64,000 nt of DNA, from NCBI RefSeq assembly GCF_006345805.1, contig NC_043009.1:62496001-62560000 (forward strand), written 5' to 3'. The translations under genes were made by a program, and so were the position numbers. Source of the DNA: Octopus sinensis. Lineage: Eukaryota. Shown here piece after piece: positions 7,501-45,063 of this stretch (the first letter of the stretch is position 1; the number at the start of each line of letters is the position of its first letter). The notes beneath the pieces are model-generated. The model was not told the DNA's origin. It worked only from the letters and a program-made list of their open reading frames with translations, and did not search any database.

Positions 7501-8257
7501 ATATCATCATCATCGTTTAACGTCCACTTCCATGCTAGTATGGGTTGGACGATTTGACTGAGGACTGGCAAACCAGATGGCTGCGCCAGGCTCCAATCTT
7601 GATCTGGCAGAGATTCTACAAGCTCGATGTCCTTCCTAACGCCAACCACTCTATATATTCTTTTACTTGTTTGACTGCAGCCATGCTGGAGCACCGCCTT
7701 TAGTCGAACAAATCGACCCCAGGACTTGTTCTTTGTAAGCCTAGTACTTATTCTATCGGTCTCTTTTGCTGAACCGCTACGTTACAGGGACATAAACACA
7801 CCAGCATCGGTTGTCAATGTTGGAGGGGACAAACACACACACACAAACATATACATACACATACATACATATATATATATGCATGTATATCGGCTCGAGG
7901 CAATAGTTGAAGTCACTTGGCCAAGGTGCCATGCAGTGGGACTGAACCCGGAACCACGTGATTGGTAAGCAAAGCTACTTACCACACAGCAGCTATATAT
8001 CATCATTTCATCACTCTATGTCCAATCTTTCCATGCCGGCATAGGTTAAATAGCTTATTGTCCAAGTTAGTTCATATTTTGGGTTAGTGCTTGGAATCAT
8101 ATTTGTTTGCATTCAAGGTATGTACATAAGTAAAACTTACTTGGAAAAGGATGCGCGGCGTTCGATCATATAATGATATAAATAATATATAAATATATGC
8201 ATATATACATACATATATGTACATACCTACATATATATATGTATATATACATGCATA

Positions 8258-8636
8258 GTGGTGGCGCAATGACCCAGTGGTTAGGGCAGCGGACTCGCGG
8301 TCGTAGGATCGCGGTTTCGATCCCCAGACCGGGCGTTGTGAGTGTTTATTGAGCGAAAACACCTAAAGCTCCACGAGGCTCCGGCAGGGATGGTGCTGAT
8401 CCCTGCTGTACTCTTTCACCACAACTTTTTCTAACTCTTACTTCCTGTTTCTGTTGTACCTGTATTTCAAAGGGCCGGCCTTGTCACTCTCTGTGTCACG
8501 CTGAATATCCCCGAGAACTACGTTAAGGGTACACGTGTCTGTGGAGTGCTCAGCCACTTACACGTTAATTTCACGAGCAGGCTGTTCCATTGATCGGATT
8601 AACCGGAACCCTCGTCGTCGTAACCGACGGAGTGCT
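8258..8636 (+). mobile_element. tRNA-derived SINE family C with recognisable A and B boxes
   Basis: TGACCCAGTGGTTAGG (A box) and GGTTTCGATCCCC (B box), followed by a non-tRNA body. Other copies at about 1-180(-), 10760-10900(-), 18525-18770(+), 23130-23290(-), 31190-31335(-), 47625-47925(+), 63815-63970(+). Confidence 0.82.
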
Positions 8637-9275
8637 TCTTTGAGTACAGGACATCAAAAAAAACGTTGAACACAATGAGACACGAAAACAGAAACAGAAA
8701 ACGAGCTTTGAACAACGAAAAAAAACAGAGAAACGAGACATTGTCCTGTTCTTGTTACCACTTTTACCCTCCGCAAAAAATCCTAAATTTTATTTAATTT
8801 GCTTTGTGGGAAGGACTGTTTCAACGAAGTTGCATATTGTCCTTGCCTTCGAAAATGTGGAGTAGATGAAACAGGGACAACTGATGAAGGGGAATATTCT
8901 TTATGTTTCTCTGCTTTTTCTCATGTCTCGTTTCTCTGTTTATTTTTTTGGTGTTTGAAAAAAAGTTCGTTTTCTATGTTTTTGTTTCTCATTGTGTTCA
9001 ACGTTGTTTTGATGTCCTGTACCCATATATGCATGTATATATACATATATATGTTAGTGTGTACATATATGTATGTATATATGCATATATTTATATATTA
9101 TTTATATTATGTGTATAAGTATTTGTGGACGTGTGTGTATGTACAAGTGTGTGTATATGTGTGTTCCCATACACACATGCACAAGCACACACACTCACAC
9201 AAGCACATAGATGAGAAAGAATGCTAGATGAGGACCACCACACATCATCTAACAGAGGAATATCTCTCTTTACAG

Positions 9276-11153: not shown

Positions 11154-11614
11154 TGTATGTATGTATGTGTATTTATACATATACGTGTGTATATGTATAT
11201 ATACTTACATATATGTGTGTGTGTGTATGTGTATGTATGTGTGTGTGTATATATGTATATACATATATACATATATATATAATAAATATATATAATTTAT
11301 ATATATATATATATATATACATGTATATATATAAATTTATATATATGTATGTATATGAATTTATACATATATATATATGTGTGTGTATGTATATATACAT
11401 ACACATACATATGTATATATTTATATATAGATATATGTATATACATATATATGTATATGTATGTATTGCATACACACATACACATGCACATATTTATCCC
11501 TAATACTCTCAGGAAAAACGAAACCCTCAAATTTTCCTTCCTGTTTGGCATGAGTTGCTTGAGCTTATATCTAATGGGACCCTCCCATCATCTTCTCTCC
11601 CACAACCCTGTGCT

Positions 11615-12320
11615 ATTCGCAGAGCTTGTGCTTCTAATGTTGAATCATCTCATCATATCCTGTGCTATCTACTGAGCATGTTCCTTGCCACTGGATCATC
11701 TCATCATATTCTGAGCCATCTGAGCATGTTCCTTGTCCTTGGATCATCTCATTGTATTCTGAACCTTCTACTGAGCATGTTCCTTGCCACTGGATCATCT
11801 CATCGTATTCTGAGCCTTCTACTGAGCTTGTTCCTTGCCACTGGATCATCTCATCGTATTCTGAGCCTTCTACTGAGCTTGTTCCTTGCCACTGGATCAT
11901 CTCATCGTATTCTGAGCCTTCTACTGAGCTTGTTCCTTGCCACTGGATCATCTCATCGTATTCTGAGCCTTCTACTGAGCATGTTCCTTGCCACTGGATC
12001 ATCTCATCATATTCTGAGCCTTCTACTGAGCTTGTTCCTTGCCACTAGATCATCTCATCGTATTCTGAGCCTTCTACTGAGCTTGTTCCTTGCCACTGGA
12101 TCATCTCATCGTATTCTGAGCCATCTACTGAGCATGTTCCTTGCCACTGGATCATCTCATCGTATTCTGAGCCATCTACTGAGCATGTTCCTTGTCCTTG
12201 GATCATCTCATCGTATTCTGAGCCATCTACTGAGCATGTTCCTTGCCTTTGGATCGTCTCATCATATCCTGTGCTACCTGCTGAGCTTGTTCCTTGCTGT
12301 TGGATCATCTCATCATCATC
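11615..12320. repeat. 51-bp-unit minisatellite, ~14 copies
   Basis: Unit CTACTGAGCTTGTTCCTTGCCACTGGATCATCTCATCGTATTCTGAGCCTT, with homogeneous centre and degenerate edges. It explains the 17-aa-repeat ORFs in several frames. Confidence 0.95.
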
Positions 12321-12424
12321 AGAAAAGCCGGTGTGGGGGTTGAATCCTCCAACGGCTGTCATCTGCCAAAGCCGTAGGCCTTACACAATGTAATTGGAAC
12401 AGTGTTTGAAATGTTTCTTTCTAG

Positions 12425-13802: not shown

Positions 13803-14549
13803 AGTGAAGACGGTACTACTGCCAAAGAAACCTCTGTGGAAAATTCTCCGTGTCTTCAGAAATCTGGGAGCAATTCTTTTATTGAATCCATGTTGGAAAG
13901 AGAAAAGAAAAACTTTGCGTCCTTCAGTTCATCTTTAAATGATCAATTTATGTCAACTGCTCAGCGTTCGCAAACTGACTGTAACTTTTTGGCGAAACCT
14001 CAGAATCTGCGAAAGATTTCTTCTGAAAGCCAGGAATTATCGCAACCTAATTTACAAGGTACTTCAACCCCAGACCCGGATGACTCGGTGTTTTATTCGA
14101 CCATAGATGGAAAAGAAAAAGAAATCAAGTGGAAGTTTGCCGATTCCTCGTGGGAGGATAACCCAGACCAAGAAAATTTTCCTTCTAATTTGAAAAAGGC
14201 TTTAAATGTAAATTACAGGTCCAAAAATACCAACACACCATTTTCTTTATCTCCATTGGAACACGATTCAAACGAAAGCGGGATGTTTGCAAATTTGTTC
14301 GGCAGTGAAGGTAAAGTGGAGAACAACTCGAAAGGTAAAACCGTCAAACTCCAGCCGACAACGAGTAGTAAGCGAAGAGTCAGGAGTGATTTAAAAAGCA
14401 AACGGAATTTGGTAAGCAAGCGAAAAGGCAAACCGACTGGTTTGGAAGACATTTCCAAACCCAAATCCTTGCTAAGCAGTGCCAACGAGTCAAAAGCTCT
14501 TGCGGAGATAACAAACACTATTGGCGAAGAAACAGATAAATGTCAGTAA
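13803..14549 (+). other. Orphan ~250-codon S/K/N-rich open frame nested in an otopetrin intron; gene fragment or retrocopy of unknown origin
   Basis: Non-repetitive frame open from the (TA)n run at ~13800 to TAA 14547-49. No strong acceptor seen and no early in-frame ATG. Confidence 0.4.
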
Positions 14550-14667: not shown

Positions 14668-15711
14668 CGCATGCACACACCTTGTTTTTTTTTCTGCAAC
14701 AGAGAAAAAAGAAACAACTGAGTTTTGTATGAAAAAAAAAAAAAATAGGTGTTAAAAAGATGAAAAAAAAAAAAGTCTTAATAGTAAAACCTCTTCTGTG
14801 GATACATCCATATGTATATACATTCTGACATACACGTGTGTGTGTCTGTGTATACATATCTATTATCTATCTATCGATATATATATATATATATATACAT
14901 GTATTTATAAAATCAAAATAAGCAACAATATATATTTGTATATGAAATTACGTTGACTTTAAAAAGACTGAGTTTCGGATTTGAAGAAAAAAAGTCTATT
15001 TTTGTCTAATTTAGTTTTTATTAATTTTTATTTCCCATATTTGTCATATATTTTGTTGTTAATGATGATGCTTACAACTACATAAAGTTGAAAACACCGG
15101 TTCCCTTCCGATCACCGAATTTAAACAACATCGAGGGCCTGGATAGTACTTAGGTGAATGAGCAAGGTGTCGTATGCAAAGCCTTATTTCTCGCCAATTA
15201 GCGGTTCGATAAAAAGAGACCGATAAAATAAGACTTAACAAAACAAAAAAAGTACTGGGGTCGACCTGTTTGACTAAAACCCCTCAAGGCGATGCTCCAG
15301 CATGGCCGCAATCCAATGACTAAAACTAGCAAAGGATAAAAAAAAATGAAAATTTCGGAATGTATCCCACCGACCATTTTTTCCATCTCCACATTCATCA
15401 TTTGCTAAGTCGTCTTTACGTTCTGAGTTCAAATTCCGCCAAGGCCGACTCCGCCCTTCATCCCTTCTGGGTGGGTAAAACAAGTACCAGTTGAGCACTA
15501 GGGGTCGATGCATTCGACCCATCTCCTCCCCCGAAATTGCTGGCCTTGTGCCAAAATTTGAAATCAGTATTATTATCCTAAGTTGCGTCGTCGCCAGCGA
15601 CATCCCAATTATAATATATCTAATAATCATTGGGTGTCGCTAGATTCTCTCCGTGTACTGTGGTCGCAACACAATATACAATAACATCCCATGGCTAACG
15701 TTTCACCACAC

Positions 15712-18430: not shown

Positions 18431-19383
18431 GTCACTGAGACACACAAGCCACAACAAGGACTGGACCTTGTGGTAGACTGTGTAGAGATACAGCTCTATG
18501 ACATTGTGGAGTGAATTTCTATGTAGTGGTGGTGTATGGCTTAGTGGTTAAGGTGTTGGGTTCATGATCATAAGATTGTGGTTTCAATTCCAGGATCGGG
18601 CATTATGTTGTGTTATTGAACAAAACACTTCATTTCATGTTAGTCCAGTCCACTCAGCTGGCAAAAGTGAGTGTTCCTGCAGTTGACTGGCATCCTGTCC
18701 AGGAGTAAATATACATCACAGAAACCAGGAAATCAGCCTTATGAGTCCATATGACACATGAAGGAGCTAATGTAGATTTGAATGGCATCGTAAATGTTGT
18801 ATTACATCCTTAGACAAGTTTCTTGCCACTACTTACATCAGCTTCTGGAAAATAATAACTAATTCATCATCATCATCATCATCGATTAATGTCCGTTTTC
18901 CATGCTAGCATGGGTTGGACAGTTCAACTGGGGCCTAGGAAGCCAGGAGGCTGCACCAGGCTCCAGTTTGATCTGGCAGTGTTTCTACAGCTGGATGCCC
19001 TTCCTAACGCCAACCACTCTGAGTGTATTTGGTGCTTTTTATGTATCACCAACACGGATGCCAGTCAGGCGGCACTGGCATCAGCCACGTTCGGATGGTG
19101 CTTTTTACATGCCACCAGCACAGGTATCATAACTACAATTTCCATTTGATTTTTTTTTTATGTTGATGTTGACGTACTTGACTCAATAGGTCTCTTCAAG
19201 CACAGCGGGTCACTCCAATTATTACTCTATAATTTCCGGTGAGTTCTTTCCAATAAACTTAAATAATCAAAATTCATTTCATTTTTGTTGCTTTAATATA
19301 AACCTAATTTTGAAATATTTCCATAATTCCAAGTGCTTTTTCTGCCACTAATGCTATGTTTTCCATTTTATTTCCAAAACCAG

Positions 19384-20198
19384 GAATCCTGTATGTAATG
19401 TGGTCCAACATCGGAAAGCAACTTCTTTACCAATCCAGCGACGAAGAGAGTCAGCGCGAGGCTAAGGTTCGATCTCAGAAGCTAAGTGTCGACTGCTCGT
19501 CATCAAGTCGTGGTTTATTTATGGGTATTTTCATACTGGTGTCCGCTGTTATCTCAATGATAGTCTTCTTCATGCTAATCAATAATCCGTCTTACACAGA
19601 CGCAGCCATCCAGCTAGAACATCTTTCTCAAGTTGTCCTCAATGTAATCGCATCTATAGCACTCATCCTGGCCTTCGTCAGGATGAAAGATTTACGATTT
19701 AGTTTGAAAAGCGAGCTCTCCCTCGAAGAAATGCTACTAATTGTCTCGTTACCAGGCGAATATATATTTGGTTTCCTCAGTATCATAGCCATTGGTGTGG
19801 AAGGGATCGATCGAAGCGGTTTAATAATTCTCCTGTCCAGTATTCTCGCCATATTTGAATCATCTCTGCAAACTATGTTTATATTGAATGGTATTCGGCG
19901 TACAGCTCACACACCACAATTACAGAGGCAGAAGACTGGACGAGAATTCATTACTTTCCTAATGGTTTGTAACATAGCCATGTGGGGTATCTACACGTTT
20001 GAGATTCACCGCTCCGAGTTCAATCCCGCACAAATGCGTTTCTATGGAGTCATGGCCTGGAATATATTCACACATATTTCTATACCACTTATTATCTTCT
20101 TCCGATTCCATTCTACAGTATGTCTCTCGAATATCTGGAAACATGCATGGAAACGAAAGTCAAATAGTCAAGAAAGTTTGACAAACCTCAACCAATAA
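19384..20198 (+). CDS. Otop: Otopetrin terminal coding exon (C domain, TM7-TM12, ending ...IFFRFHSTVCLSNIWK...NLNQ*)
   Basis: Acceptor CCAG|GA (AG 19382-19383) gives the spliced junction YSLICA-G-ILYVMWSNIG. Six hydrophobic segments; FLxxCNIAMW and RFHSTVCL motifs. Five exons sum to 1557 nt (518 aa + stop) with consistent phases. Confidence 0.95.
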
Positions 20199-30449: not shown

Positions 30450-31519
30450 CTTATGTGTTCATATATATGTATGTGTTACTGGGTATGTATCTATCGTGTG
30501 CCTGCACATGCACAAACATGTACACAGATACACATACATACATACACATATATATATATATATATGTATAAGCAACCAGGAGAACCACCATGTCAAATTC
30601 TATGATTATCCAATTTCAACCACATCCACTCATTTTTCTCTGTAACTCCAATAAAACATTTTAATCTTAACAATTTTGGTTTTGTTGTTCTTCCTTATCC
30701 ATCTTTTTTCTGTGAGCTGAGTCTTACTGAATATAACATATGAATGACCATGGGATTATACCTAGAAAGTTACCTATTTCTTTATTACCCACAAGGTGCT
30801 AAACACAGAGTGGACAAACAAGGACAGACATAGGTATTAAGTCGATTACATCGACCCCAGTGCGTAACTGGTACTTAATTTATTGACCCCGAAAGGATGA
30901 AAGGCAAAGTCGACCTCGGCGGAATTTGAACTCACAACGTAACGCAGACGAAATACCGCTAAGCATTTCGCCTGGCGTGCTAACGTTTCTGCCAGCTCGC
31001 CGCCTAGAAAGTTACCCTCTGATGCACAGCTACCATCTGAGGCACAGTTACCCTCTGAGGCACAAGTCAGGCAAGATTGTTTATGGAAGACTAGCAGTCA
31101 CCCGTGCATGACCTGCCTACCTTCTTCACGCCATGAATGTCATCCAAGAGAATGGCAAAGGCTGATGCAGCCTGGCACCAGTGACATTGCAACTCATTTC
31201 TGCAACTGAGTGAACTGGAGCAACATGAAATAAAATGTCTTGCTCAAGAACACAACACAACACAGCCTAGTTTGAGAATTGAACTAACTACCTTGTGATT
31301 GTGAACCTGAAACTCTAACCACTGAGCCATCAACCTTCACATAACATACAACCATACATACATATATAATTATTACTAAATCATTACAATATTAGACAGA
31401 ATGCTTTGTCGTGTTCATTCTGGTGGGTTGTGAGTTCAATTCCTGCCAAGGCCAACTTTGTTGCTTTTCATCTTTTCCAGTTCAATAACTATAGAACTAA
31501 TTATGGATCTGGGTCGATC

Positions 31520-33869: not shown

Positions 33870-35387
33870 ATGTCTCACTTGCACTTCAAATCTGGACCAA
33901 CACGGTCAGATATGAGTGAAATGTACAAAATGCTTCGGAATACAAGCCAACAAATCGATAAAGGTCTCAAAGTCATGATGGCACAACTGAGAGAGGAGCT
34001 TTTCTCCAATGCAATGTTTACAGAAATTGCCGAGTTGGACGGAGATAAGATGCAGAATCTACTGATGGAAATGAAGACAATTATTGATGCAGATCAGCTG
34101 ACTGAAGTAAGAGATATAATGGAGCCGAAAGCGATTCACGCCTCGAATAAAGATTTGAATATGAATAACGAGAACTATTCTGAAGAGCCGAACCAATATA
34201 ATGATTACAACATCGAAGAACTGTCATTACCGGTTTTACCAGAGTTTGAAAAAGAAACGCAAGAAGATACAGAAGACACATTGAACGAAGCTAATCAGAC
34301 AAGAGAAACTACTAAAAACGATGTGGAATATATTAATAATGAAAACGAAAGCCACCAAAGTATGATATTTACTGTTTCGCCGTCGACTGGTTCACAAATA
34401 TCTAGTGATGAAATGGCTGAAGAGACTGACGAAGCAGAAATGACATTTTTATTGCATCCCTCTCCTATATCTTCAGCAAATGAGGATGACATCCATTATC
34501 ATGTGCAGTCTCTGAGTGATATGCTTCAAACTGAACATTTGGCAAACCTGACGAAAAGGAAATATTCATTCTGGCACGCAGTAAAAAATTTTCACTTAGC
34601 TGAACTAAATATGAATTGGAGCAATGTGAATCCACCTCTAGTGTATATGATCTCTACAACTGAAACGTCTCAAGGGAGTAAATCAGCCATTGAAGAATTA
34701 GCAGAATGCTTGACGACACTCTGTTTCAAAATGGAAACAGTGATTCTGCTGCAAAAAGTTCAAAAAAACATTTCCAAGTATAAACAAATTGACGAAATCA
34801 TGCAGAATCTTTTCAAATTTTACAGTAGCGGGGAAGTTTGTAGACGCCTCATTGAGTTATGGCGTGTTGGGACAGACGCTGAGGAAATTACATCGTTTTT
34901 GACGTGGAATTCAAAAGAAGAATGGTATAGTAATAATGTCTGGTCCTGCTTCAAGAATGATCCAAGAGATTCCAGAAAGAATGTCAATTGGCAATTGAAA
35001 ATAAATAGTGATCAATCAAAACGCTCCAGACTTCCTGAGCAAATTACAAATCGAACCAAACGAAGGTCTTTTCGCCAAACTGTTTATCCAAGAGAGACGA
35101 AATATCAAGGAAGGAATTATAAATTTAGGAGTGACTCAGTTATTGTCACCAAAAGAAAATCTAAAGAATCTAATGCAAAATGCAATTATATACACGTGAA
35201 TTCGCTGGAGTCGAAGACTCCAAAAACTGAAAGGAACTACAGGCGAACCACACGCCACATCAGAACCGTACACTGCCAGAGGAAAAAGAATTTCTCGAAT
35301 GATAATTATCCAAACCATTCCTATAGTGCCATGCGAGAGATACACTGTGCTGATATGCGTCGTGGAGCTAGGAGATTCTTAAAGTGA
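33870..35387 (+). CDS. Intronless 505-aa ORF of unknown function (paralog A): helical N-terminus, acidic linker, conserved 139-aa core, basic tail
   Basis: 1.5-kb uninterrupted non-repetitive ORF with ATG start. Its core is 82/139 identical (manual count) to the ORF at 41735, without gaps. Confidence 0.82.
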   Translation: MSHLHFKSGPTRSDMSEMYKMLRNTSQQIDKGLKVMMAQLREELFSNAMFTEIAELDGDKMQNLLMEMKTIIDADQLTEVRDIMEPKAIHASNKDLNMNNENYSEEPNQYNDYNIEELSLPVLPEFEKETQEDTEDTLNEANQTRETTKNDVEYINNENESHQSMIFTVSPSTGSQISSDEMAEETDEAEMTFLLHPSPISSANEDDIHYHVQSLSDMLQTEHLANLTKRKYSFWHAVKNFHLAELNMNWSNVNPPLVYMISTTETSQGSKSAIEELAECLTTLCFKMETVILLQKVQKNISKYKQIDEIMQNLFKFYSSGEVCRRLIELWRVGTDAEEITSFLTWNSKEEWYSNNVWSCFKNDPRDSRKNVNWQLKINSDQSKRSRLPEQITNRTKRRSFRQTVYPRETKYQGRNYKFRSDSVIVTKRKSKESNAKCNYIHVNSLESKTPKTERNYRRTTRHIRTVHCQRKKNFSNDNYPNHSYSAMREIHCADMRRGARRFLK

Positions 35388-35838
35388 TTCCACAACGAAT
35401 TTAACCAAAATCAAAATATTACAAATTCGGTTCCCACAAGACTTGGTGAATTATTCCGAGCAAAGTGGTGAAATCAAATCGTCTGCCCAGACATTCCCGA
35501 TGGACGATACATCTGATACCTGACTGACCCAGCTTTCTTCTCTTCTTACTTCAGGATTAAATCTCGCCTTCTGGTTTCGGTACGAAGAATATGTGTTTTT
35601 AAAAAAGAAAAGTCATTAACAAACAAAAAAAAATTTAAAAAGAGAAAAGTAAAAATCAAAAAAGAATACATAAATATTTATTTTAAAAAAAACAGGTTGA
35701 ATGGAAATAGTGGTTTTATTAGACTTTCCACAGTGGAATGTTTCTGATATTTGTGAACCACACCCTTAATCCCAAGCATGTGCGTGCGGTCAATCTCACC
35801 CTATCTCTCTGTCTCTTCTATCCACCCCTGCAAATACA

Positions 35839-35891
<53 letters not shown>

Positions 35892-36541
35892 AAACATGTA
35901 CACATATATTTTTACACAGGACAAAAACATACATACAAAAATTTGTACCAAAACAGACAGAATATTTTCAGAAACCAACCCCAGTGGTGCCCTTTTTTCC
36001 AGGAATCTCTGTGATTCAACCGCATTTGGAGAGAGGGTACCCATACTCACCCATACTAGGTAGTGCATAAAACTGCAAGAGCTGCTATATACGAATATAC
36101 CTTACATAGAATGTATATACATGTATGACCACACGTTACGTATGCACGTGTATATACACCAATTAGAAAACATGTATACACATTACGTAACAATTAAGCA
36201 CGTATATACTTTATAGTGCGTAACCTAAACATGCATATATTCACATACTTGTAGATGATAGTATGTGATATACACACATACCTGTATATACATTAACATA
36301 CACACGTTACGAAACATAGACACATACGCATATAACAGAAATATACACATATGAACAGATATGTATGTGTGTATATATATATATATGTGTGTAATTTAGA
36401 CATATATATATATGTATATATATAGATGTATATATAATGTATGCAAATATATGTATATATGTATTTATAAATATGTGTATATATGTGTGTGTGTGTGTGT
36501 GTGTGTATATGTATATATATATATATATGTATGTGTGTATA

Positions 36542-36604
<63 letters not shown>

Positions 36605-37229
36605 CATACATCTGTTATATATATGTGATGGGGGTGGAAATGACAAGTAACAATTTAAGAAGGAATCTAATAAAATGATTCTAAAAATTATATATATAAA
36701 AAATATTACCAGTTTTGATGGTGAATCTCGTTTTATCAAATATCAGTAAAAATTTATAAAAACTTGAAGTAAAAAACAATTCATCTTCTGTCTGGGGGTC
36801 ACAAACATGTTTTTACTTCAAATGTTTATAGATTTTTACTGATATTTGATAAGATGAGATTCATCATCGAAACAGGTAATTTTTTTTTTTTTTTATAATT
36901 TTAAAATCCTTTTTTATTAAATTCCTTCTTAAATTGAAATGTCTTAGATTTACTTCTATGCTATTTCCACCTCCATTAATAAAAATTTGATTTGTATAAA
37001 CCTCTAATCTTTAACCAACTATATATATATATATAATATATATACATGCATACATATAAGTACATATACAATGCGTGTGCACGTGTGTATGAGACTATAT
37101 AATCCACTCCATGATATTTACATTTACTGAGGATCTCTATTAAACCCATGGTATACGATACATAGATTTATTGATGTTATTACCGACTTACACACACGTA
37201 CATGCACGGACATAGATACACCCACGCAT

Positions 37230-37570
37230 GCATATATACATACATATATACATTCGTATATACATGCATGCATGCATACATACATACATACATACATACA
37301 TACATACATACACACATGCATACACACATACATGCATACATACATACATACATACATACATACATGCATGCATACATACATACATACATACATACGTACG
37401 TACGTACGTACATACATACACACATGCATACATACATACATACATACACATACATGCATACATGCATACATACATACATACATACATACATACATACATA
37501 CATACATACATACATACAACATACATACATACATACGTACGTACATACGCACACACACACGTACATATAT
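37230..37570. repeat. (CATA)n tetranucleotide microsatellite
   Basis: Direct inspection. Confidence 0.95.
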
Positions 37571-39106
37571 AAACCTACATATAGACACACACACATACAC
37601 GCACACACAGCGTTCCCAAAGAAACGGACAAATCTGTCGGAAGTTTCTCTGAAACAGAGAAAATATTTGCAATTTAAATCCCTTTTATGTTTTTTAAACA
37701 AGAATAAAAGAAAAAAAACTTTCATCTGGCGATGAAGTTAACCTATGACGGTGCCTTAATACAAGTACCAGTGATATTCTGTGGTAGAGCCATACATAGA
37801 CGATAGCCCTTCCTATGTGCCTGGTTAAAAAATAGCAATTAATTATAGTCTAGATGTATATTTACACTTTACTGGAGTCTGCCTGCTATTACAGATGCTT
37901 TCAATAAAGAGGAACTTTCTTCACTCAACACTTTTATATTTTTATTGTTGCCGCTGCCTCTGTTGTTGCTTTTTGTCTTCATTTTTAAAGAAAGTATTTA
38001 AAACATTTTATTACGTGTTGTCTTTATATGCATTTATGATTGTTTGTTAATTTGTATATAAATGTTTGATGTCGTTGTGTAACGTCCCGTTCATCGCCAC
38101 GCGATTTTTTTTATTGAAAATATTTTTTAAAAAACTGTCTAACGATTCGTTTTGCGTTTGCCTAAATAAAACTGAATATAATTAACCTGTAAATATCATG
38201 AAGGAAAAATGATTATAGAATGAAAAATTATTATAAAAGAGGCGATTGATTGTAAAAAAATCAGAAGAGTAGGGTTAAAATACTTTATGGTTACGGTCGG
38301 GAAATTTGTAGCGAGGTATGATTGGGGGCAATGTAAACGCTTTGAACATCTTCCTAAAAATCTGGGTTTGCACCCTCTCAGCAAATTTCATTCCCGCAGT
38401 TATGTGTATGGTATATTATAAAAATCTGGAGTGTGGTTACGTTCTTAGTTCAAATCCCGACAGGGAAAAGTCTTGATATTTCGCTTTGGGTCAATAAAAT
38501 TAGTTCTAGGATAGATTCAGTCAACTTTATACCCTTATAAAATGTTATTCCCTGTGGGTTGACATATTCCTGTTCGTGAATCACGACATATTACTGTCCG
38601 TGCTCTACATCTTATTTCTGGGTGAGACACATCTTCCTGTCTGTGGCTTACAACATTGTGTTCTTTATTGTGAACAATGGTACCTTCCACGTATCAATCA
38701 TAGCACCATGTCCTCCCATAGAATTGTATTTTCGGTCACACTCCTTTTTCACACCAAGACAAAAAAAAATGTTACACATATTACGCTACTTTAAAAAAAA
38801 AATTTTGTCAGGGTCTGAAACTGGAGTTTAACCCTTTTTTTTTTCTCTCAACAACATTCGCAGACCTTTGTTGAAACCATTCTCTGTGCCTCTTTCTAAC
38901 ATTGCAATAGTCAAATCTAAGCCCTATCTCTCTCCCTCGCCATCCTTCCTTCTCTTAATCCTGACGTATTTCTTCCCCCTTCAGTTTTAAATCAGACTCC
39001 AAAATGGTTCTAATTGTTGTTGTTTGGAGCCTAGTCAGACACGACCGAGTAGACATACGATCGAAACATTTCAGCCACTACTTCACCGTGATTTCTCTAT
39101 AGGCGC

Positions 39107-39262
39107 AGGAGTGGCTGTGTGGTAAGTAGCTTGCTAACCACATGGTTGCGGGTTCAGTCCCACTGCGTGACATCTTGGGCGAGTGTCTTCTGCTATAGCC
39201 CCGGGCCGACCAATGCCTTGTGAGTGGATTTGGTAGACGGAAACTGAAAGAAGCCTGTCGTA

Positions 39263-39335
<73 letters not shown>

Positions 39336-39532
39336 GTTTGTGTGTCTGTGTTTGTCCCCCTAGCATTGCTTGACAACCGATGCTGGTGTGTTTACGTCCC
39401 CGTCACTTAGCGGTTCGGCAAAAGAGACCGATAGAATAAGTACTGGGCTTACAAAGAATAAGTCCCGGGGTCGATTTGCTCGACTAAAGGCGGTGCTCCA
39501 GCATGGCCGCAGTCAAATGACTGAAACAAGTA
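39107..39532 (+). mobile_element. tRNA-derived SINE family A, near full length
   Basis: Head GTGGTAAGTAGCTTGCT...GGGTTCAGTCCCAC, internal (TA)n/(TG)n, tail CAGCATGGCCGCAGTC..GACTGAAACAAG. Other copies or fragments at about 852-1070(-), 1810-2010(-), 2660-2830(-), 4818-5040(-), 5750-6100(+), 7660-7990(-), 13235-13500(-), 15200-15340(+), 16225-16375(-), 45825-46225(-), 56210-56580(-), 57590-57930(+), 61750-61915(-), 63160-63500(+). Confidence 0.88.
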
Positions 39533-39859
39533 GAGTTTCTCTAGAACTAGATTATCAAATGTATCATTCCATCCTCTGAGAGGGTAGGATGTGATCTGGC
39601 TGCTATTTCTAGCTCGTTAACCGAGCAACCATATAAATGCACCCTCGATAGCTCGTTCGGTGCGAGTATTTCATTGTTTGGAGTTCAACGAAGACAAATG
39701 TTAAACATACTCAAATATGTTCAACCAAAGAGCCTCTGCGTGGTTGCTTGACATGCTAGAAATAGAAAACTAATCTTCCTTAAATCATCTATCGTCCTAC
39801 AACGAGAAAAACATAGCAGATATCATGTCCTGCATACACTGCCTATATTCTTTTCTACT

Positions 39860-41130
39860 CTAAGCACAAGACCCGAAATTTTGGGGGAGGGGGCCAGTCG
39901 ATTAGATCGATCTCAGTATGCGACTGGTACTTAATTTATCGATCCTGAAAGGATAAACGGCAAAGTCGACTTCGGCGGAATTTGAACTCAGAATGTAAAG
40001 ACAGACGAAATACCCATTTCTTTACTACCCACAAGGGGCTAAACATAGAGTGGACAAACAAGGACAGACAAACGGATTAAGTCGATTAGATCGATCGAGT
40101 ACGCAACTGGTACTTAATTTATCGACCCCGAAAGGATGAAAGGCAAAGTCGACCTCGGCGGAGTTTGAACTCAGAACGTAACGGCAGACGAAATACAGCT
40201 ACGCATTTCGCCCGGCGTGCTAACGTTTCTGCCAGCTCACTGCCTTTATTAAAGATGAAATTGTCATGGCCGGAAGTATAGATTCTGTTCATAAGGAGCT
40301 CACCTTGTGTTCAAGTTCCGTTGAATCCACACATTTTTCTTTGCACTCCTTTGCAGTTTCTGACGTTTGTGAATACTTGTTATACAAGCAATTTCCTCTT
40401 TGCTACCTGGCGGAACAATAACCACAACAATCTTATGTGCCATATAGAAGCGCACAAGCGACAGTTAAGTCCGCATTTGGAAGTATTTGGGTGACAGAAG
40501 AGGAAACAGTTGCAAATTGTGATTCGGAACCGAGTCGAGAATATTTCCTGCAAAGAAACAATCCACAGCCTGAAAACGAGAGAGATCGCCTGGCCTTGGC
40601 ATAAATTATATTGCGTTAGTACAGTGATGAGCGGTGTGTGTGTCTGTGTGTTGATGTAAGGGTAACAGTGGCGTGGTGTGTTGGTATATATTTCTTTACT
40701 ACCCACAAGGGGCTAAACGCAGAGAGGACAAACAAGGACAGACAAACGGATTAAGTCGAATCCATCGACCCCAGTGCGTAACTGGTACTTAATTTATCGA
40801 CCCGTAGCCGTATTTCGTCTGTCGTTACGTTGTGAGTTCAAATTCCGCCGAGGTCGACTTTGCCTTTCATCCTTTCGGGGTCGATAAATTAAGTACCAGT
40901 TCCGCACTGGGGTCGATGTAATCGACTTAATACCTATATCTGTCTTTGTTTGTACCCTCTATGTTTAGCCCCTTGTAGGTAATAAAGAAATAGGTACTTA
41001 ATTTATCGACCCCGAAAGGATGGAAGGCAACGTCGACCTCGGCGGAATTTGAACTCAGAACGTAACGGCAGACGAAATAGGGCTACGCATTTCGCCCGAC
41101 GTGGTAACGTTTCTGCCAGCTCGCCGCCTT
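39860..41130. mobile_element. Cluster of SINE family B copies (tandem and nested, both orientations)
   Basis: Repeated ACTGGTACTTAATTTATCGACCCCGAAAGGATGAAAGGCAAAGTCGACCTCGGCGGAATTTGAACTCA. Other copies at about 10050-10265(-), 15400-15565(+), 30775-31005(-), 44810-45020(+), 49935-50150(-). Confidence 0.88.
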
Positions 41131-41615
41131 ATGCGGTGTGTTGGTATAATAGACACGGTGGTAGTGTCTCACTACAACGATGGTGCTAATGTCTTGGCGT
41201 GTAGGTGATGGTGGTGAGAGCTGCTATATTGGCAGTGGTGGTGGTGGTGGTTGTGGTGGTACAATATTGGTAGATTGTGTATAGACGTAGTGAGTTATCC
41301 AATAAATCTGATGTTATCCAATAAATCATGTAATTGACTCATATTTGAATTAATCCACGCTAGTGAAACGTGTGTAGTGCTGTTTTAATCTATCCATTTG
41401 TTTTTGTTCACACTTACACACATACACATATATGGACGTCAAAGTTAAAGCATGAAGCATCATGTAGAGTTGACTGTCTTCCTGGGAAAGGATAAACGAC
41501 GAAGAATAACAAGAAGGCTGGAAAAGAAAGAATAAATATCCGTTAGAACTTACAGACTGAGACTGTCGTCTGCTGAAAATATCGGTATAGCATGATGAAG
41601 AGAGAGGAGGAGGAG

Positions 41616-41643
41616 TGAGTCATTGATTCGCTTATGACGTCAT
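41616..41643 (+). promoter_or_regulatory. AP-1 site (TGAGTCA) plus full palindromic CRE (ATGACGTCAT) ~90-120 bp upstream of the paralog B ATG
   Basis: TGAGTCA at 41616-41622 and ATGACGTCAT at 41634-41643, both perfect consensus matches. Confidence 0.5.
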
Positions 41644-41734
41644 ACAGAGAGGAAGTGATGTAGGGAAAGGATTGCAACTGCGTGCGATTTCTATCCAACG
41701 TTTATATCCCATACATTGCGACTACTCGACAAAG

Positions 41735-42868
41735 ATGGAGATTCCTGAGATGGAAAACCACGACAGCATGATTTTTACTGTCTCGCCATCAACGAGCTCC
41801 TCAAATTTCACCGACAGTGAAGAGAGCTGCGATATTTTCTCGGCAGCAATGAGCATGAACCACGATCGAAACTTGACGGCTGCAGTGGAGAGGTGTACCC
41901 CGCTGCAGCTTCACCTCTGTCGGGACAGCAACGGTGAAGCAAATATCTTACAACAACAAGAAATGCGTTCACACGCAAGCGACGACAACGATTGTCCCTC
42001 AATGGTCGGCATAGTTCTACCTCACACCAGTTCACCGACATTCAATGACACTAATTCCATCATGAACCAATCGCCAGTAACGTCCTCGAATTCGTCGCAG
42101 TTACCTTGCGAATCTTCAAACACCAATGAATCGTTGGAGGACAAAAATCTCAGGGTGGACGCCCGTAAGGTATACGACATGCTGCAGGAGGAACGTATTG
42201 CTAACCTCACGAAACGAAAACACTCTTTCTGGCGCGCTTTAAAAAACTTTCAACTGGCCAAAATAAATATGAACTGGAGCAACCAAGCAGCTACTGTTTT
42301 GAATATTCTTTCAGCCAGTAATGCTCCTTGTGGCGATATATCAGCACTAGCAGAACTAGGGGAGTATCTTATACCCCTCTGCTTCAAAGCAGAGACTTTG
42401 ATGCTTCTTCATAAGGTGCAAAAAAGTGCAACGAAATACAAGAAAATTGATGAAAGTATGGAAAAGACGTTCCAGAAGCATGGAAATGGAGAGTTGTATC
42501 GGCGGCTCCTAGAATTATGGCGTGTTGAGACAGTTGCTGAAGAAATCACCTCCTTTATGACATGGAATTCGAAAAAAGAATGGTATACCAATGCCTGTGC
42601 TTATTTCAATGCCAATCTAAAAGAAAGAGGCAAACATAAAGATGGCTTTTCGTCCAAGCAGAACCACTCCATAGCAATGACTCACAAGAATCGTAAAGGA
42701 CGCATTCTAACTGAAAACTATGAATTAGAAAGCTCTTCAGAATCAGTACGATCAGGTAGAAATCCTCTCTGCAATTCCAGTGATTGTCAGGCAAAAGAAT
42801 TTACCGATAGAGGATCTAACGATTCTCCTATAAAGTGCTACTCAAATATTTCTCTCTTATCCTTTTGA
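41735..42868 (+). CDS. Intronless 377-aa ORF of unknown function (paralog B); first ATG in AAGATGG context
   Basis: Long non-repetitive ORF (the track starts it at TTG 41672). Shares SMIFTVSPST, ANLTKRKxSFW, NMNWSN, LCFK, ELWRV and AEEITSFxTWNSKxEWY with paralog A. Confidence 0.82.
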   Translation: MEIPEMENHDSMIFTVSPSTSSSNFTDSEESCDIFSAAMSMNHDRNLTAAVERCTPLQLHLCRDSNGEANILQQQEMRSHASDDNDCPSMVGIVLPHTSSPTFNDTNSIMNQSPVTSSNSSQLPCESSNTNESLEDKNLRVDARKVYDMLQEERIANLTKRKHSFWRALKNFQLAKINMNWSNQAATVLNILSASNAPCGDISALAELGEYLIPLCFKAETLMLLHKVQKSATKYKKIDESMEKTFQKHGNGELYRRLLELWRVETVAEEITSFMTWNSKKEWYTNACAYFNANLKERGKHKDGFSSKQNHSIAMTHKNRKGRILTENYELESSSESVRSGRNPLCNSSDCQAKEFTDRGSNDSPIKCYSNISLLSF

Positions 42869-45063
42869 TCTCAAGATAACATTTCAAACTGGTTTTTTTC
42901 TGCAACGCACGTTGTGAATACAGAATTTAACTAATTAAAGTATTCTTAACAGAAAAAAAAATAATAATAATTACACTAATCTAAGATTGTTGGAGTTTTT
43001 GACTCGAGTATTTCTAGAATGAAAATGGTTAAGCAGTGATAGAAAAGCTACTACCTTGGGGTAACGGGTTCAAGTTAAGACTACAAAACTGTACCGATGA
43101 GAAAGAGTAAAAAAACTTCGAGAAGAATGTTGGAGGATTCAGGTTTATTCGCGTTCCTAACCTCTAGCATAATCTTAATACAAGGGTAAAAAAACTTGTG
43201 ATTTTCAGAGTGCAAGATATATTTTGGAACTCTGGTTGCAGATTACTGTGTATTCGTTTGCAAATTCTAAAATTGCTTTTCACACTTATAATTATATTAG
43301 CTTACTGATTAAAGACAATAATCAATAAATAAGGAAAATATCAATACATATAAATGCATATATTATATACGACAAAAATACTATATTACTGAGATTTGTT
43401 TGAAATTATTGAATGTGTAACTATGGATATATCCTTATGGTATAAATATGGAATTGATATTAAGGTTTTTAGCTTTTCATGGTTGAAAATAACACTGTTT
43501 CTATAATCAGAACCAGATTTAACTGTACAAGCTGTATCGACGAACTGAAACATCTTATAATACCACAAATGGCCACTCAAACAACAATCATTATTGATAC
43601 TAAAGTATTGATATTACATCGAGGTTTTCCACAAAACTTCGATATGATAATGAGAGATCTATTGTTGTTATTGTGATATTACCGTGATTGTTGAATAGGT
43701 TTTGTACTTTTAGAAAGTTAATTATGCTCAGCACTGCACGACTTATCAGTTAAAATATTTCTGTCACTAATAACAATGAATTCTATCTCATCTCTCTGTC
43801 TTATACTATCAGTTATATCAATTATATTATTAACAAAAGACACCAGACGACAGAAGGAAGAATGAAGTTGACGGATGTTGCTGAAAGCAAATAAATTCAA
43901 TGAATTTTAATCGATATAGTTATGTTACTCTTTTACTGACTTCGCTCATGTCGGTACTCCTCGGTGGAGTACAGCCTATAGGGAGGGAAGGGTCTTTAGT
44001 CGATCATATTGATTGTAAGAGAATTCTTTAGTTTCAAGTATGAAAAGAGTTAAGCTTGTGTCGGTTGATATCCTGACGTCATTCTCGGCAGTTTACGGAA
44101 AATTTTATCTTTTTTTTTCATATATTTCTGTGTTCGGCAATGTCTTTCATATGCTGGAAATTGCCGAACACGCGCTCGCGCGCACAAATATATTTTCAAA
44201 TAAATGAGTAATTTTCCCGTAAACTACCGAGAATGACGTGTCATGGAGTCGAGGAAGTAAGCTGGTACAAGTTTGATACTTGCCATACTTAACACGAAAA
44301 AATGCCGGTTATCAGTACTTCAGTCTGGTGCTTATCTTACTGAATATCTATCAAATGGCTGAGTTTATACTTTTTGTGTAAAGCGATGGACTTCGATGAG
44401 CCAGAGCCATCGAGAGAGCTTCTTCGTAGTCTCCTCACCCGCAAGAAACATCAGCCGAATCTTCTTTCGATCACACACACACGGCGACTACATACAAAAC
44501 ATATAGTTCGGTCCCCAACTCCTCTTGAACCATAGAATGCCTCCAATCAATTGACAGGTCGCCCCATCCCCCAGTTCCATGCTAACTATTCCTGATAGCA
44601 AAAGAGGTCGATAGAATAAGTACCAGACATTAAAAATAACTATTGAGGTCGATTCATTCGATTAAATGATTGAAACAAGTAAAAGATGGGAGTTAAGTGC
44701 CTTCCACATTGTACAGATAACGAATTTATCGGAATTTCACGTGCCAACAAAAAATGGTGGACGCGCATTCATGCATACTGACATTTATTACGTAATATTC
44801 TTTCTAAATTAGGGCGGCGAGCTGGCAGAAGCGTTAGCACGCCGGGCGAAATGCTTAGTGATATTTCGTCTGTCTTTACGTTCTGAGTTCAAATTCCGCC
44901 GAGGTCGACTTTGCCTTTCATCCTTTCGGGGTCGATAAATTAAGTACCAATTGCGTACTGGGGTCGAGCTAATTAACTGGCCCCTCCCCAAAAAATGTCT
45001 GGATTTGTGCCTAGAGTAGAAAAGAATATTTTTTCTAAGTTCCATTTTGTAGATATATGCCAT

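What the first reader, a model, noticed from the sequence alone, without database searches (positions are those of the whole stretch)
33870..42868. Tandem pair of intronless genes defining an unrecognised 139-aa domain
Seen in sequence: 34518-34934 and 42176-42592 encode gap-free cores with 82/139 identities (~59%, manual count). Invariant W/F/Y/C-rich blocks include ANLTKRKxSFW, KNFxLAxxNMNWSN, LCFKxET, KVQK, KYKxIDE, RRLxELWRV and AEEITSFxTWNSKxEWY. A separate SMIFTVSPST motif is conserved upstream, while the linkers and tails have diverged. I recognise no known family or transposon signature. Inference: purifying selection on a helical domain in an old tandem duplicate, plausibly a lineage-specific family of retrogene or domesticated origin. 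IDE-x12-GE-xx-RRL-x-ELWR faintly recalls death-fold helices, which is only a hypothesis. The Ser/Thr-Pro motif may be a phospho-dependent docking site.
Basis: partly seen in the sequence, partly recalled or inferred. Interest (0 to 1): 0.72.

Follow-up and report, generated by a model that had tools for sequence, protein, structure and literature searches.

The report
Octopus genes from Penelope retrotransposon ORF1
Two neighbouring octopus genes share a conserved helical domain that is not new: it comes from the first reading frame (ORF1) of Penelope-like jumping genes, and cephalopods appear to have kept it as ordinary host genes under purifying selection.

Summary
ORF 33870-35387 (505 aa) and ORF 41735-42868 (377 aa) share a gap-free 139-aa core with exactly 82 identities (BLASTP E=8e-55), and every listed motif is present. 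The window is Octopus vulgaris chromosome OX597826.1, between an otopetrin gene and Kidins220.

The domain has no Pfam or PDB relative, but it is not an orphan. A profile of the cephalopod sequences alone finds about 100 relatives. Those relatives are the ORF1, or N-terminal part, of canonical Penelope-like retroelements (PLEs). In 5 of 5 loci examined, the relative is followed at once by, or fused to, a reverse transcriptase plus GIY-YIG endonuclease. Profile-profile comparison gives 98.9% probability (E=1.4e-17).

The octopus genes behave as host genes:
- No RT or EN lies nearby.
- The coding sequences are single-exon and intact in several species.
- dN/dS is 0.04-0.08 against a close relative.
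- Variation is about 20-fold lower than in the flanks.
- At least four cephalopod paralogue groups exist; three of them form one clade (100/100 bootstraps).

AlphaFold (pLDDT 90.6) gives three long helices, not a death fold.

Best reading: a cephalopod family of domesticated PLE ORF1 genes, probably oligomeric nucleic-acid-binding proteins. Expression and function are untested.

The parts
33870..35387 (+). Gene A: single-exon coding sequence of 505 aa (paralogue group A). It has an acidic N-terminal helical region, an acidic linker, the PLE-ORF1-like domain and a basic tail.
   Evidence: ORF. Annotated as a 505-aa gene in O. vulgaris (L011:1991-3508). Has a 99% relative P0001 and a 41% orthologue P0002. 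dN/dS is 0.04-0.075. One difference in 1518 nt against the reference, versus 1.4% in the flanks.
33870..34139 (+). Gene A N-terminal region (aa 1-90). It is conserved with P0002 and with group C (P0005, P0107, P0115). Gene B lacks it.
   Evidence: Alignment A4, with invariant D30, F45, L64 and K69. Acidic, pI 5.3. No detectable homology to the N-termini of transposon ORF1s.
34359..34388 (+). Short linear motif SMIFTVSPST in the acidic, Ser/Thr-rich linker of gene A.
   Evidence: Related motifs occur only in cephalopod groups A, B and C, and in none of the ~130 transposon-type proteins held.
34467..34964 (+). PLE-ORF1-like domain of gene A (aa 200-365), predicted as three long helices.
   Evidence: Profile search. 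Alignment A3. AlphaFold2 pLDDT 90.6 and pTM 0.82. hhalign 98.9%, E=1.4e-17 against transposon ORF1s. tblastn of single transposon domains gives E down to 4e-12 here.
34956..35384 (+). Basic C-terminal tail of gene A (143 aa, 38 K+R, net +26, pI 11.0).
   Evidence: The same kind of tail is found in P0002 (pI 10.6) and in transposon ORF1s (pI 10.2-12.0).
35388..41734 (.). Spacer of 6.3 kb between the two genes. It holds (CA)n, (TA)n and (ATAC)n microsatellites (about 35.8-37.7 kb and 39.2 kb) and several SINE copies (39845-40259, 40684-41131). It contains no third copy of the domain and no RT or EN.
41735..42868 (+). Gene B: reading frame of 377 aa (paralogue group B). It starts directly with the acidic segment and the SMIFTVSPST motif, lacks the N-terminal helical region, and has a short, weakly basic tail.
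   Evidence: O. vulgaris protein P0004 is 99% identical over 86% of the query. The orthologue P0003 starts with the same MEIPE.E.HDSMIFTVSPSTSSS. One synonymous difference in 1134 nt versus about 16 expected.
41765..41794 (+). Short linear motif SMIFTVSPST of gene B (aa 11-20).
42134..42622 (+).
   Evidence: tblastn with transposon domains gives E down to 6e-13.

Best explanation
The two genes belong to a cephalopod gene family that descends from ORF1 of a canonical (Neptune-type) Penelope-like retroelement (PLE). ORF1 is the coiled-coil N-terminal protein encoded upstream of the reverse transcriptase.

Shown:
- The ~155-aa domain is homologous end to end to PLE ORF1.
- The octopus copies have lost the RT/EN partner.
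- They are single-exon loci with orthologues in other cephalopods.
- Cephalopod groups A, B and C form one clade.
- They evolve under strong purifying selection.

Inferred:
- One ancestral ORF1 was domesticated in an early cephalopod and then duplicated into at least four paralogue groups. Genes A and B here are a tandem pair.
- On the way the family gained a host-specific short motif, S-x-(M)-I-F-T/P-V-S/D.
- It lost the element-specific ILPRKF and GEPE motifs in the loop between helices 1 and 2.

Most likely mechanism (inferred, about 0.35-0.4): the protein works like a retrotransposon ORF1 or Gag-like protein. The elongated three-helix domain, plus the N-terminal helices in gene A, would drive self-association. 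The strongly basic tail (pI 11) would bind RNA, and the acidic linker motif would recruit a host partner. The result would be a ribonucleoprotein-forming adaptor. Gene B lacks the N-terminal region and most of the basic tail, so it would be a modulating or dominant-negative partner of gene A.
For: Homology:
- A profile built from the four cephalopod sequences alone found 102 proteins at E<=1e-3 among 1.84 billion. Most matches cover the whole domain.
- The domain alignment of 32 sequences is nearly gap-free, with invariant R31 and W132 and near-invariant W36, W51, D109, M112, L128, E140 and S143.
- Cephalopod-only versus transposon-only profiles give hhalign 98.9%, E=1.4e-17, over 152 columns.
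- Single transposon domains hit both window genes by tblastn at E of 1e-7 to 6e-13.

The relatives are PLE ORF1:
- L012: ORF1 is followed by an ORF with the GxKF and DKG motifs, RVT_1, a C-x4-C-x2-C linker and GIY-YIG, next to an inverted second copy.
- L015, L016 and L017 have the same layout.
- In the Mytilus protein P0052 (locus L013) the domain is fused in frame to the RT N-terminus.
- The L012 RT-EN query finds 43-46% identical RT-EN directly downstream in all of these loci.
- Craig et al. 2021 (PMC8557442, Fig. 1 legend) describe a PLE ORF1 with a coiled coil, sometimes separated by a frameshift.

Host-gene status:
- No RT or EN was found in the window, L011, L014 or L023.
- Gene A versus a close relative shows 19 nucleotide differences, only 3 of them non-synonymous. 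dN/dS is 0.04-0.075 and binomial P=2.9e-8.
- Each coding sequence has 1 synonymous difference against the O. vulgaris reference, where about 22 and 16 are expected from the flanks (P=8e-9 and 1.4e-6).
- Orthologues P0002 and P0003 both occur in one other species. Group C occurs in O. vulgaris and Argonauta hians.
- The eight sequences of cephalopod groups A-C are monophyletic in 100/100 NJ bootstraps.

Architecture: the layout of acidic N-terminus, domain and basic tail is shared with transposon ORF1s. The AlphaFold2 model is confident: three long helices, pLDDT 90.6.
Against: - No expression data could be obtained. The Logan contigs end in microsatellites or a SINE, so they are genomic.
- Synteny across species could not be tested, because the other species' contigs are only 2-3 kb.
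- The tree is unrooted, so the direction of transfer (element to host) rests on parsimony.
- Nobody has characterised PLE ORF1 biochemically. Self-association and RNA binding are analogies with LINE ORF1p and Gag, not results.
- The N-terminal region of gene A shows no detectable homology to the N-termini of transposon ORF1s.
- The gene B and P0003 pairing is weakly supported by the domain tree (18/100). It rests mainly on their shared N-terminus.
- Low variation within the coding sequences could partly reflect inflated flank rates at microsatellites.
Confidence: 0.78

Rival explanations
1. The two ORFs are simply old, inactive ORF1 remnants of Penelope-like elements (transposon fossils) with no host function.
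For: The domain is homologous to PLE ORF1. The coding sequences are intronless. The neighbourhood is rich in SINEs and microsatellites, and PLEs are reported to prefer microsatellites as targets (PMC8557442). No expression data are available.
Against: - The 505- and 377-codon frames are intact although synonymous sites between the paralogues are saturated.
- dN/dS is 0.04-0.075.
- Variation in both coding sequences is about 20-fold lower than in the flanks.
- Paralogue-specific orthologues occur in other species.
- No RT, EN or hammerhead remnant lies nearby.
- The window holds only two copies.
Confidence: 0.06
2. The transfer ran the other way. A mollusc or cephalopod host gene with this domain was captured by a Penelope-like element and became its ORF1, so the octopus genes are the original host lineage.
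For: The tree is unrooted. PLEs and other retroelements are known to capture extra ORFs (PMC5408684 title and abstract). The named transposon-type members seen here are molluscan (Mytilus).
Against: - The element-linked members are far more diverse than the cephalopod genes: about 90 clusters at 50% identity, with pairwise domain identity of about 20-45%.
- Cephalopod groups A, B and C form one tight clade (100/100).
- The host genes are intronless, as expected for a retroelement-derived sequence.
- The host genes share the element's overall charge architecture.
- No intron-containing host homologue was found outside cephalopods.
Confidence: 0.07
3. Same origin, different function. The family is a restriction factor that poisons assembly of related PLE ribonucleoprotein particles, like the Gag-derived restrictors Fv1 and enJS56A1.
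For: It derives from the element's own structural protein. Gene B is truncated at both ends, as dominant-negative forms often are. Repeated duplication (four groups) is common in defence families.
Against: - Selection in the recent lineage is strongly purifying, with no sign of an arms race.
- Group C is about 93% identical between Octopus and Argonauta.
- The loop motifs conserved in all element copies (ILPRKF, GEPE) are lost. This argues against co-assembly with element ORF1.
- Craig et al. report that Naiad-clade PLEs are long inactive in cephalopods. That statement concerns a different PLE clade.
Confidence: 0.15
4. One reading: a lineage-specific, previously unseen domain unrelated to transposons, perhaps death-fold-like.
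For: No Pfam or PDB sequence match. No significant Foldseek match.
Against: Homology to PLE ORF1 is significant and reciprocal. The model has three ~45-residue helices, not a six-helix death fold.
Confidence: 0.02

Closest known systems
ORF1 / N-terminal coiled-coil protein of canonical endonuclease-containing Penelope-like elements (Neptune type), as drawn in Craig et al. 2021, Fig. 1 (PMC8557442)
   Same: The ~155-aa three-helix domain is homologous (hhalign 98.9%, E=1.4e-17). The order is the same: acidic N-terminal part, domain, basic tail. Both are intronless.
   Different: - The octopus genes have no RT/GIY-YIG partner, no frameshift junction and no hammerhead or pseudo-LTR.
- They are low-copy host loci with orthologues and purifying selection.
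- The ILPRKF and GEPE loop motifs and the first conserved Trp are lost.
- A new linker motif (SMIFTVSPST) has been gained.
- Gene B lacks the N-terminal region and most of the basic tail.
L1TD1 (mammalian host gene derived from LINE-1 ORF1p)
   Same: The kind of event is the same (my own knowledge): the non-enzymatic first ORF of a non-LTR-type retroelement is retained as an RNA-binding host gene without the RT.
   Different: The protein fold is unrelated (L1 ORF1p is Transposase_22: coiled coil, RRM and CTD). No sequence or structural similarity was found here. The element class and the host lineage are also different.
Gag-derived domesticated genes (Arc, PNMA, PEG10/RTL families; the restrictor Fv1)
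   Same: Analogy only (my own knowledge): a structural retroelement protein co-opted by the host, often single-exon and duplicated.
   Different: Those are capsid-fold proteins from LTR elements. There is no homology here, and no capsid-like fold is predicted.
Smac/DIABLO and MIC60-type elongated helical bundles (best Foldseek hits)
   Same: Long antiparallel helices of similar length.
   Different: The matches are not significant (E 0.55-3, TM 0.24-0.40, identity about 10%). The resemblance is generic, with no evidence of relatedness.
Death-fold domains
   Same: All-helical.
   Different: A death fold is a compact six-helix bundle of about 90 residues. The model here has three ~45-residue helices over about 160 residues, and no death-fold hit was returned.

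Membership tests
PLE ORF1 domain family (homology) | Significant sequence similarity over the whole domain to proteins encoded at the 5' end of Penelope-like elements | tested here: met
   (E down to 1e-10 with a cephalopod-only profile against 1.84 billion proteins). (98.9%, E=1.4e-17). (pairwise tblastn E down to 6e-13). (near gap-free alignment).
PLE ORF1 domain family (homology) | Shared architecture: acidic N-terminal part, helical domain, basic C-terminal tail | tested here: met
   Gene A tail has pI 11.0 and net charge +26, against transposon tails of pI 10.2-12.0. Gene B meets this only partly (tail pI 8.9).
Active or fossil Penelope-like element copy | RT with GxKF and DKG motifs and a GIY-YIG endonuclease directly downstream of ORF1, or fused to it | tested here: not met
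   No RT or EN similarity in the window (best E=1.2), in L011, or around the paralogues in L014 and L023. The same queries find RT-EN at E=0 in L013 and L015-L017.
Active or fossil Penelope-like element copy | Hammerhead ribozyme or pseudo-LTR, and tandem or inverted partial copies | tested here: not met
   No hammerhead in the window at the Rfam gathering score. No repeat family around the genes other than SINEs and microsatellites.
Active or fossil Penelope-like element copy | Many near-identical copies per genome | tested here: inconclusive
   The window holds only two diverged copies. Each paralogue appears on one contig per assembly. A whole-genome copy count was not possible with these tools.
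Canonical EN+ PLE, Neptune type (applies to the transposon relatives, not the octopus genes) | GxKF/Y and DKG motifs, RT, CX2-5CxxC linker, and GIY-YIG with two Cys between GIY and YIG (PMC8557442) | tested here: met
   The L012 ORF2 frame reads GKGLKFTP, EADKGG, RVT_1, CNRPNCGLC and LIYVMRCTGCDEEYIGETG, and matches GIY-YIG in Pfam. The hammerhead is only sub-threshold (L016:332-370, E=0.021).
Domesticated transposon-derived host gene | Purifying selection on the coding sequence | tested here: met
   dN/dS of 0.04-0.075, with 3 non-synonymous of 19 differences, P=2.9e-8. Variation in both genes is depleted relative to the flanks.
Domesticated transposon-derived host gene | Orthologues in several species at the same genomic position | tested here: inconclusive
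   Orthologues exist: P0001, P0002 and P0003, and group C in Argonauta. Their contigs are 2-3 kb, so synteny cannot be read.
Domesticated transposon-derived host gene | Transcription and translation in host tissues | not testable with these tools
   The Logan contigs found are genomic: their ends lie in microsatellites or a SINE. No RNA data are accessible.
Death-fold superfamily | Compact six-helix bundle of about 80-100 residues | tested here: not met
   The AlphaFold2 model has three long helices, 3-52, 74-119 and 122-163. There are no death-domain hits in Foldseek against PDB.
Processed retrogene of a host gene | An intron-containing parent gene elsewhere, and poly(A) or target-site-duplication remnants | tested here: not met
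   All detectable relatives are either the single-exon cephalopod paralogues or PLE ORF1s. No intron-containing parent was found. Poly(A) remnants were not searched for specifically.

The most novel reading that the evidence does not exclude
Cephalopods carry an old family, now at least four paralogue groups, of host genes domesticated from the ORF1 protein of Penelope-like retroelements. As far as I could find, this would be the first documented co-option of a PLE non-enzymatic protein. The family has gained its own docking motif and now acts as a ribonucleoprotein-forming adaptor in the host. The tandem pair here (a full-length gene and a truncated one) would form a regulator-effector couple.
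Probability: 0.55. Interest if true: 0.65.

Novelty: new variant of a known kind. Interest (0 to 1): 0.55.

Why it matters
Penelope-like elements are the retroelements closest to telomerase. Their ORF1 has no curated family, no solved structure and no known biochemical function. This work gives three things:
- a defined, alignable ORF1 domain of about 155 residues, with a confident three-helix model;
- evidence that a host lineage has kept this domain under selection for a long time, which would add PLEs to the short list of retroelements whose ORF1 or Gag-like protein has been domesticated (LINE-1 gave L1TD1; LTR elements gave Arc, PNMA and RTL);
- an annotation for several 'hypothetical proteins' of Octopus and Argonauta.

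The domain is not an orphan or a death-fold-like invention, and its origin is a transposon.

Tried and rejected
- Pfam on both proteins and on all 102 family members found no family for the domain. The only hits were TPR and similar domains on two false positives, P0038 and P0057.
- PDB sequence searches, with a single sequence and with a profile, found nothing.
- AlphaFold2 with only four sequences gave pLDDT 46.6, which is unusable. With 32 sequences it gave 90.6.
- Foldseek against PDB and BFVD found nothing below E=0.38.
- The third homologous-protein search, with the 32-sequence profile, returned only two short proteins and gave no named taxa.
- I tried to read expression from the Logan contigs and rejected it. 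The 29 non-collinear bases at the 5' end of L006-L010 are the end of an octopus SINE, not a spliced exon. The species-B contigs end in microsatellites.
- dN/dS between paralogues and between distant orthologues is uninformative, because dS is saturated.
- Homology between the N-terminal region of gene A and the N-termini of transposon ORF1s was not detected.
- The species behind ERR12374250 could not be identified.
- No hammerhead ribozyme reached the Rfam gathering score in the transposon loci. There was one sub-threshold hit.
- Literature searches for a domesticated PLE ORF1 found nothing.

Full report
**Observation**

The + strand carries two long reading frames:
- 33870-35387, 505 aa, starting at ATG.
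- 41672-42868 as listed, from a TTG. The biological start is the ATG at 41735 (MEIPEMENH..., 377 aa).

They are the two longest non-repeat ORFs in the window. They share exactly 82/139 identities without a gap, and full-length BLASTP gives E=8e-55. SMIFTVSPST is identical in both, at 34359-34388 and 41765-41794.

**Where we are**

The window matches Octopus vulgaris chromosome OX597826.1 (GCA_951406725.2) near 73.65 Mb. Each coding sequence differs from that reference by a single nucleotide.
- Upstream lies an otopetrin exon at 19356-20198 (Pfam E=1.3e-77).
- Downstream lies a Kidins220-type gene with ankyrin repeats, KAP NTPase and SAM_KIDINS220.
- The 6.3-kb spacer is microsatellites and SINE copies.

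**Is the domain known?**

Curated libraries say no.
- Pfam finds nothing for either protein.
- PDB sequences give no match, whether queried with a single sequence or a profile.

A word-indexed search found only a near-identical protein (P0001), two diverged orthologues from one other species (P0002 and P0003, both in run ERR12374250), and the O. vulgaris annotation of gene B (P0004).

I then built a profile from these four cephalopod cores (A1) and ran it exhaustively against 1.84 billion representatives. It returned 102 proteins at E<=1e-3, and most matches cover the whole domain.

Two of these hits, plus the weaker P0007 and P0069, are further cephalopod paralogues:
- P0005 = O. vulgaris CAI9721000.1 on another chromosome. 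Its counterpart in Argonauta hians is about 93% identical.
- P0006 comes from another species.
- P0069 is from O. bimaculoides. P0007 is its counterpart in another assembly.

The remaining hits are proteins of 250-450 aa. They have an acidic N-terminus, the domain, and an N/Q/R-rich basic tail that ends near an FLG motif.

**What the remaining hits are**

They are the 5' protein of Penelope-like retroelements (PLEs).

- **L012.** The ORF1-like gene (7965-9218) is followed, in another frame that is open across the junction, by a sequence reading GKGLKFTPTP ... EADKGG ... YGLPKVHK. It matches RVT_1, has a CNRPNCGLC linker and matches GIY-YIG. An inverted second RT/EN copy lies beside it.
- **L015, L016, L017.** These have the same ORF1-then-RT/EN layout. 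In L016 the two ORFs overlap by 4 nt.
- **Mytilus galloprovincialis VDH91710.1 (P0052, locus L013).** Here the domain is fused in frame to the RT N-terminus.
- **Positive control.** The L012 RT-EN protein finds 43-46% identical RT-EN directly downstream in L013 and L015-L017.

GxKF/Y, DKG, the CX2-5CxxC linker and the CCHH-type GIY-YIG are the published hallmarks of canonical PLEs. The linker marks the Neptune and Nematis clades. The same paper draws an optional ORF1 with a coiled coil, sometimes separated by a frameshift (PMC8557442).

**Strength of the link**

- Cephalopod-only versus transposon-only profiles give hhalign probability 98.9%, E=1.4e-17, over 152 columns.
- Individual transposon domains hit both window genes by tblastn at E of 1e-7 to 6e-13.
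- The 32-sequence alignment (A3) is nearly gap-free, with invariant R31 and W132 and near-invariant W36, W51, D109, M112, L128, E140 and S143.
- Only the domain aligns. The N-terminal region of gene A does not.

**Are the octopus copies transposons or host genes?**

The evidence favours host genes.

1. No RT or EN similarity exists in the 64-kb window (best E=1.2). None exists in the O. vulgaris locus L011, nor within 10 kb of the paralogues in L014 and L023. No hammerhead ribozyme is present.
2. The window holds only these two copies.
3. Gene A differs from its counterpart in a close relative (genomic Logan contigs L006-L010) at 19 nucleotides, of which only 3 change the protein. dN/dS is 0.04-0.075 and binomial P=2.9e-8.
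4. Against the O. vulgaris reference, each coding sequence has one synonymous difference. The surrounding non-coding DNA differs at 1.2-4.4%, which predicts about 22 and 16 differences (Poisson P=8e-9 and 1.4e-6).
5. Both paralogue types are intact single-exon ORFs in another species, although synonymous sites are saturated.
6. In a neighbour-joining tree of 90 domains, the eight sequences of cephalopod groups A-C form one clade in 100/100 bootstraps. Group C has 99/100 support and groups A+B have 67/100.

This pattern fits a single domestication followed by duplication. Because the tree is unrooted, the direction of transfer rests on parsimony and on the far greater diversity of the element-linked members.

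**Structure**

With four sequences AlphaFold2 failed (pLDDT 46.6). With the 32-sequence alignment it gave pLDDT 90.6 and pTM 0.82:
- helices at 3-52 (kinked near residue 20), 74-119 and 122-163;
- a less confident loop at 53-73.

That loop is where all element copies carry ILPRKF...GEPE, and where the cephalopod genes have diverged. Foldseek finds nothing significant in PDB or BFVD. The best matches are Smac/DIABLO and MIC60 bundles at TM of about 0.4. The model is not a death fold.

**Architecture and likely mechanism**

Gene A, P0002 and the group C proteins keep the charge layout of element ORF1s:
- an acidic N-terminal part;
- the domain;
- a strongly basic tail. Gene A's tail has pI 11.0 and net charge +26; element tails have pI 10.2-12.0.

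Gene B and P0003 start directly at the linker motif and have a short, weakly basic tail (pI 8.9).

The motif S-x-(M)-I-F/L-T/P-V-S/D sits in an acidic, Ser/Thr-rich linker. Among the proteins held, it occurs only in cephalopod groups A, B and C. The pattern was written after seeing these sequences, so that exclusivity is indicative only.

By analogy with LINE ORF1p and Gag-derived genes (established knowledge, not tested here), I infer a self-associating, RNA-binding, particle-forming adaptor. The linker motif would recruit a host partner, possibly in a SUMO- or phosphorylation-dependent way; that is speculation. Gene B would modulate gene A. I put this mechanism at about 0.35-0.4. I put the origin and host-gene status at about 0.8.

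**What could not be done**

- **Expression.** The Logan contigs proved to be genomic. Their ends lie in microsatellites, and the odd 29 bases at the 5' end of L006-L010 are the end of an octopus SINE that also occurs at 44798-45029 and elsewhere in the window.
- **Synteny in other species.** Not possible, because the contigs are only 2-3 kb.
- **Genome-wide copy number.** Not possible with these tools.
- **Taxonomic range of the element family.** Unknown beyond Mytilus. Most members come from unnamed assemblies and metagenomes.

**Novelty**

Literature searches found no report of a domesticated PLE ORF1. The kind of event is known: a retroelement structural gene co-opted by the host, as with L1TD1, Arc, PNMA and RTL. 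The source, PLE ORF1, and this protein family appear to be new. I file it as a new variant of a known kind, of moderate interest.

Noticed in passing
window 15070-15178 (+): Full-length match to 5S rRNA (Rfam RF00001, 46.9 bits, above the gathering score of 38, E=2.3e-6). It lies in an intergenic or intronic stretch. It could be a dispersed 5S gene, a pseudogene or a 5S-derived SINE.
   Followed up: no
window 19356-20198 (+): A 280-aa open frame matching the C-terminal half of Otopetrin (PF03189, E=1.3e-77, profile positions 188-434). It is the last large exon of the upstream neighbouring gene.
   Followed up: partly
window 11644-12314: A 51-bp minisatellite, 13.2 copies at 92% identity. It is open in one frame as a 17-aa repeat, GSSHRILSLLLSLFLAT (ORF 11555-12343). 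This is probably non-coding.
   Followed up: partly
window 30771-30944, 39845-40259, 40684-41131, 44798-45029: Several direct and inverted copies of a ~170-nt SINE-like repeat (GGCGGAATTTGAACTCAGAAC...GCTAACGCTTCTGCCAGCTCG), clustered just upstream of gene B. In a close relative, a copy ends right next to the position equivalent to window 33516, about 350 bp upstream of gene A. The window has no copy there, so this is an insertion difference.
   Followed up: partly
window 42868 onward; L011:10001-41051: The O. vulgaris annotation (P0004, 380 aa) replaces the last ~37 codons of gene B with an exon about 30 kb downstream, close to the Kidins220 gene. The unspliced tail (...SSSESVRSGRNPL...) faintly resembles the tail of the orthologue P0003 (...SSESIGLESDSGRPI...). 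The splice may therefore be an annotation artefact.
   Followed up: partly
window 13836-14549 (+): A 237-aa Ser/Lys-rich open frame with no Pfam match. It may be an exon of an unannotated gene or a chance ORF.
   Followed up: no
L016:332-370 (+): Sub-threshold match to Hammerhead_HH9 (25.6 bits, E=0.021) about 140 nt upstream of the ORF1 of a Penelope-like element. This fits the small hammerheads reported in PLE pseudo-LTRs, but it is below Rfam's cut-off.
   Followed up: no
L012:9170-9541 and L016:1700-1703: In the elements, ORF1 and the RT frame either overlap or are open across the junction in a different frame. In Mytilus P0052 they are fused in frame. This fits the frameshift-separated ORF1 drawn by Craig et al. 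2021, but no pseudoknot was looked for.
   Followed up: no
L017:1-255: A GIY-YIG endonuclease fragment lies upstream of the element's ORF1 on the same strand. This is the partial head-to-tail tandem arrangement typical of Penelope-like elements.
   Followed up: no
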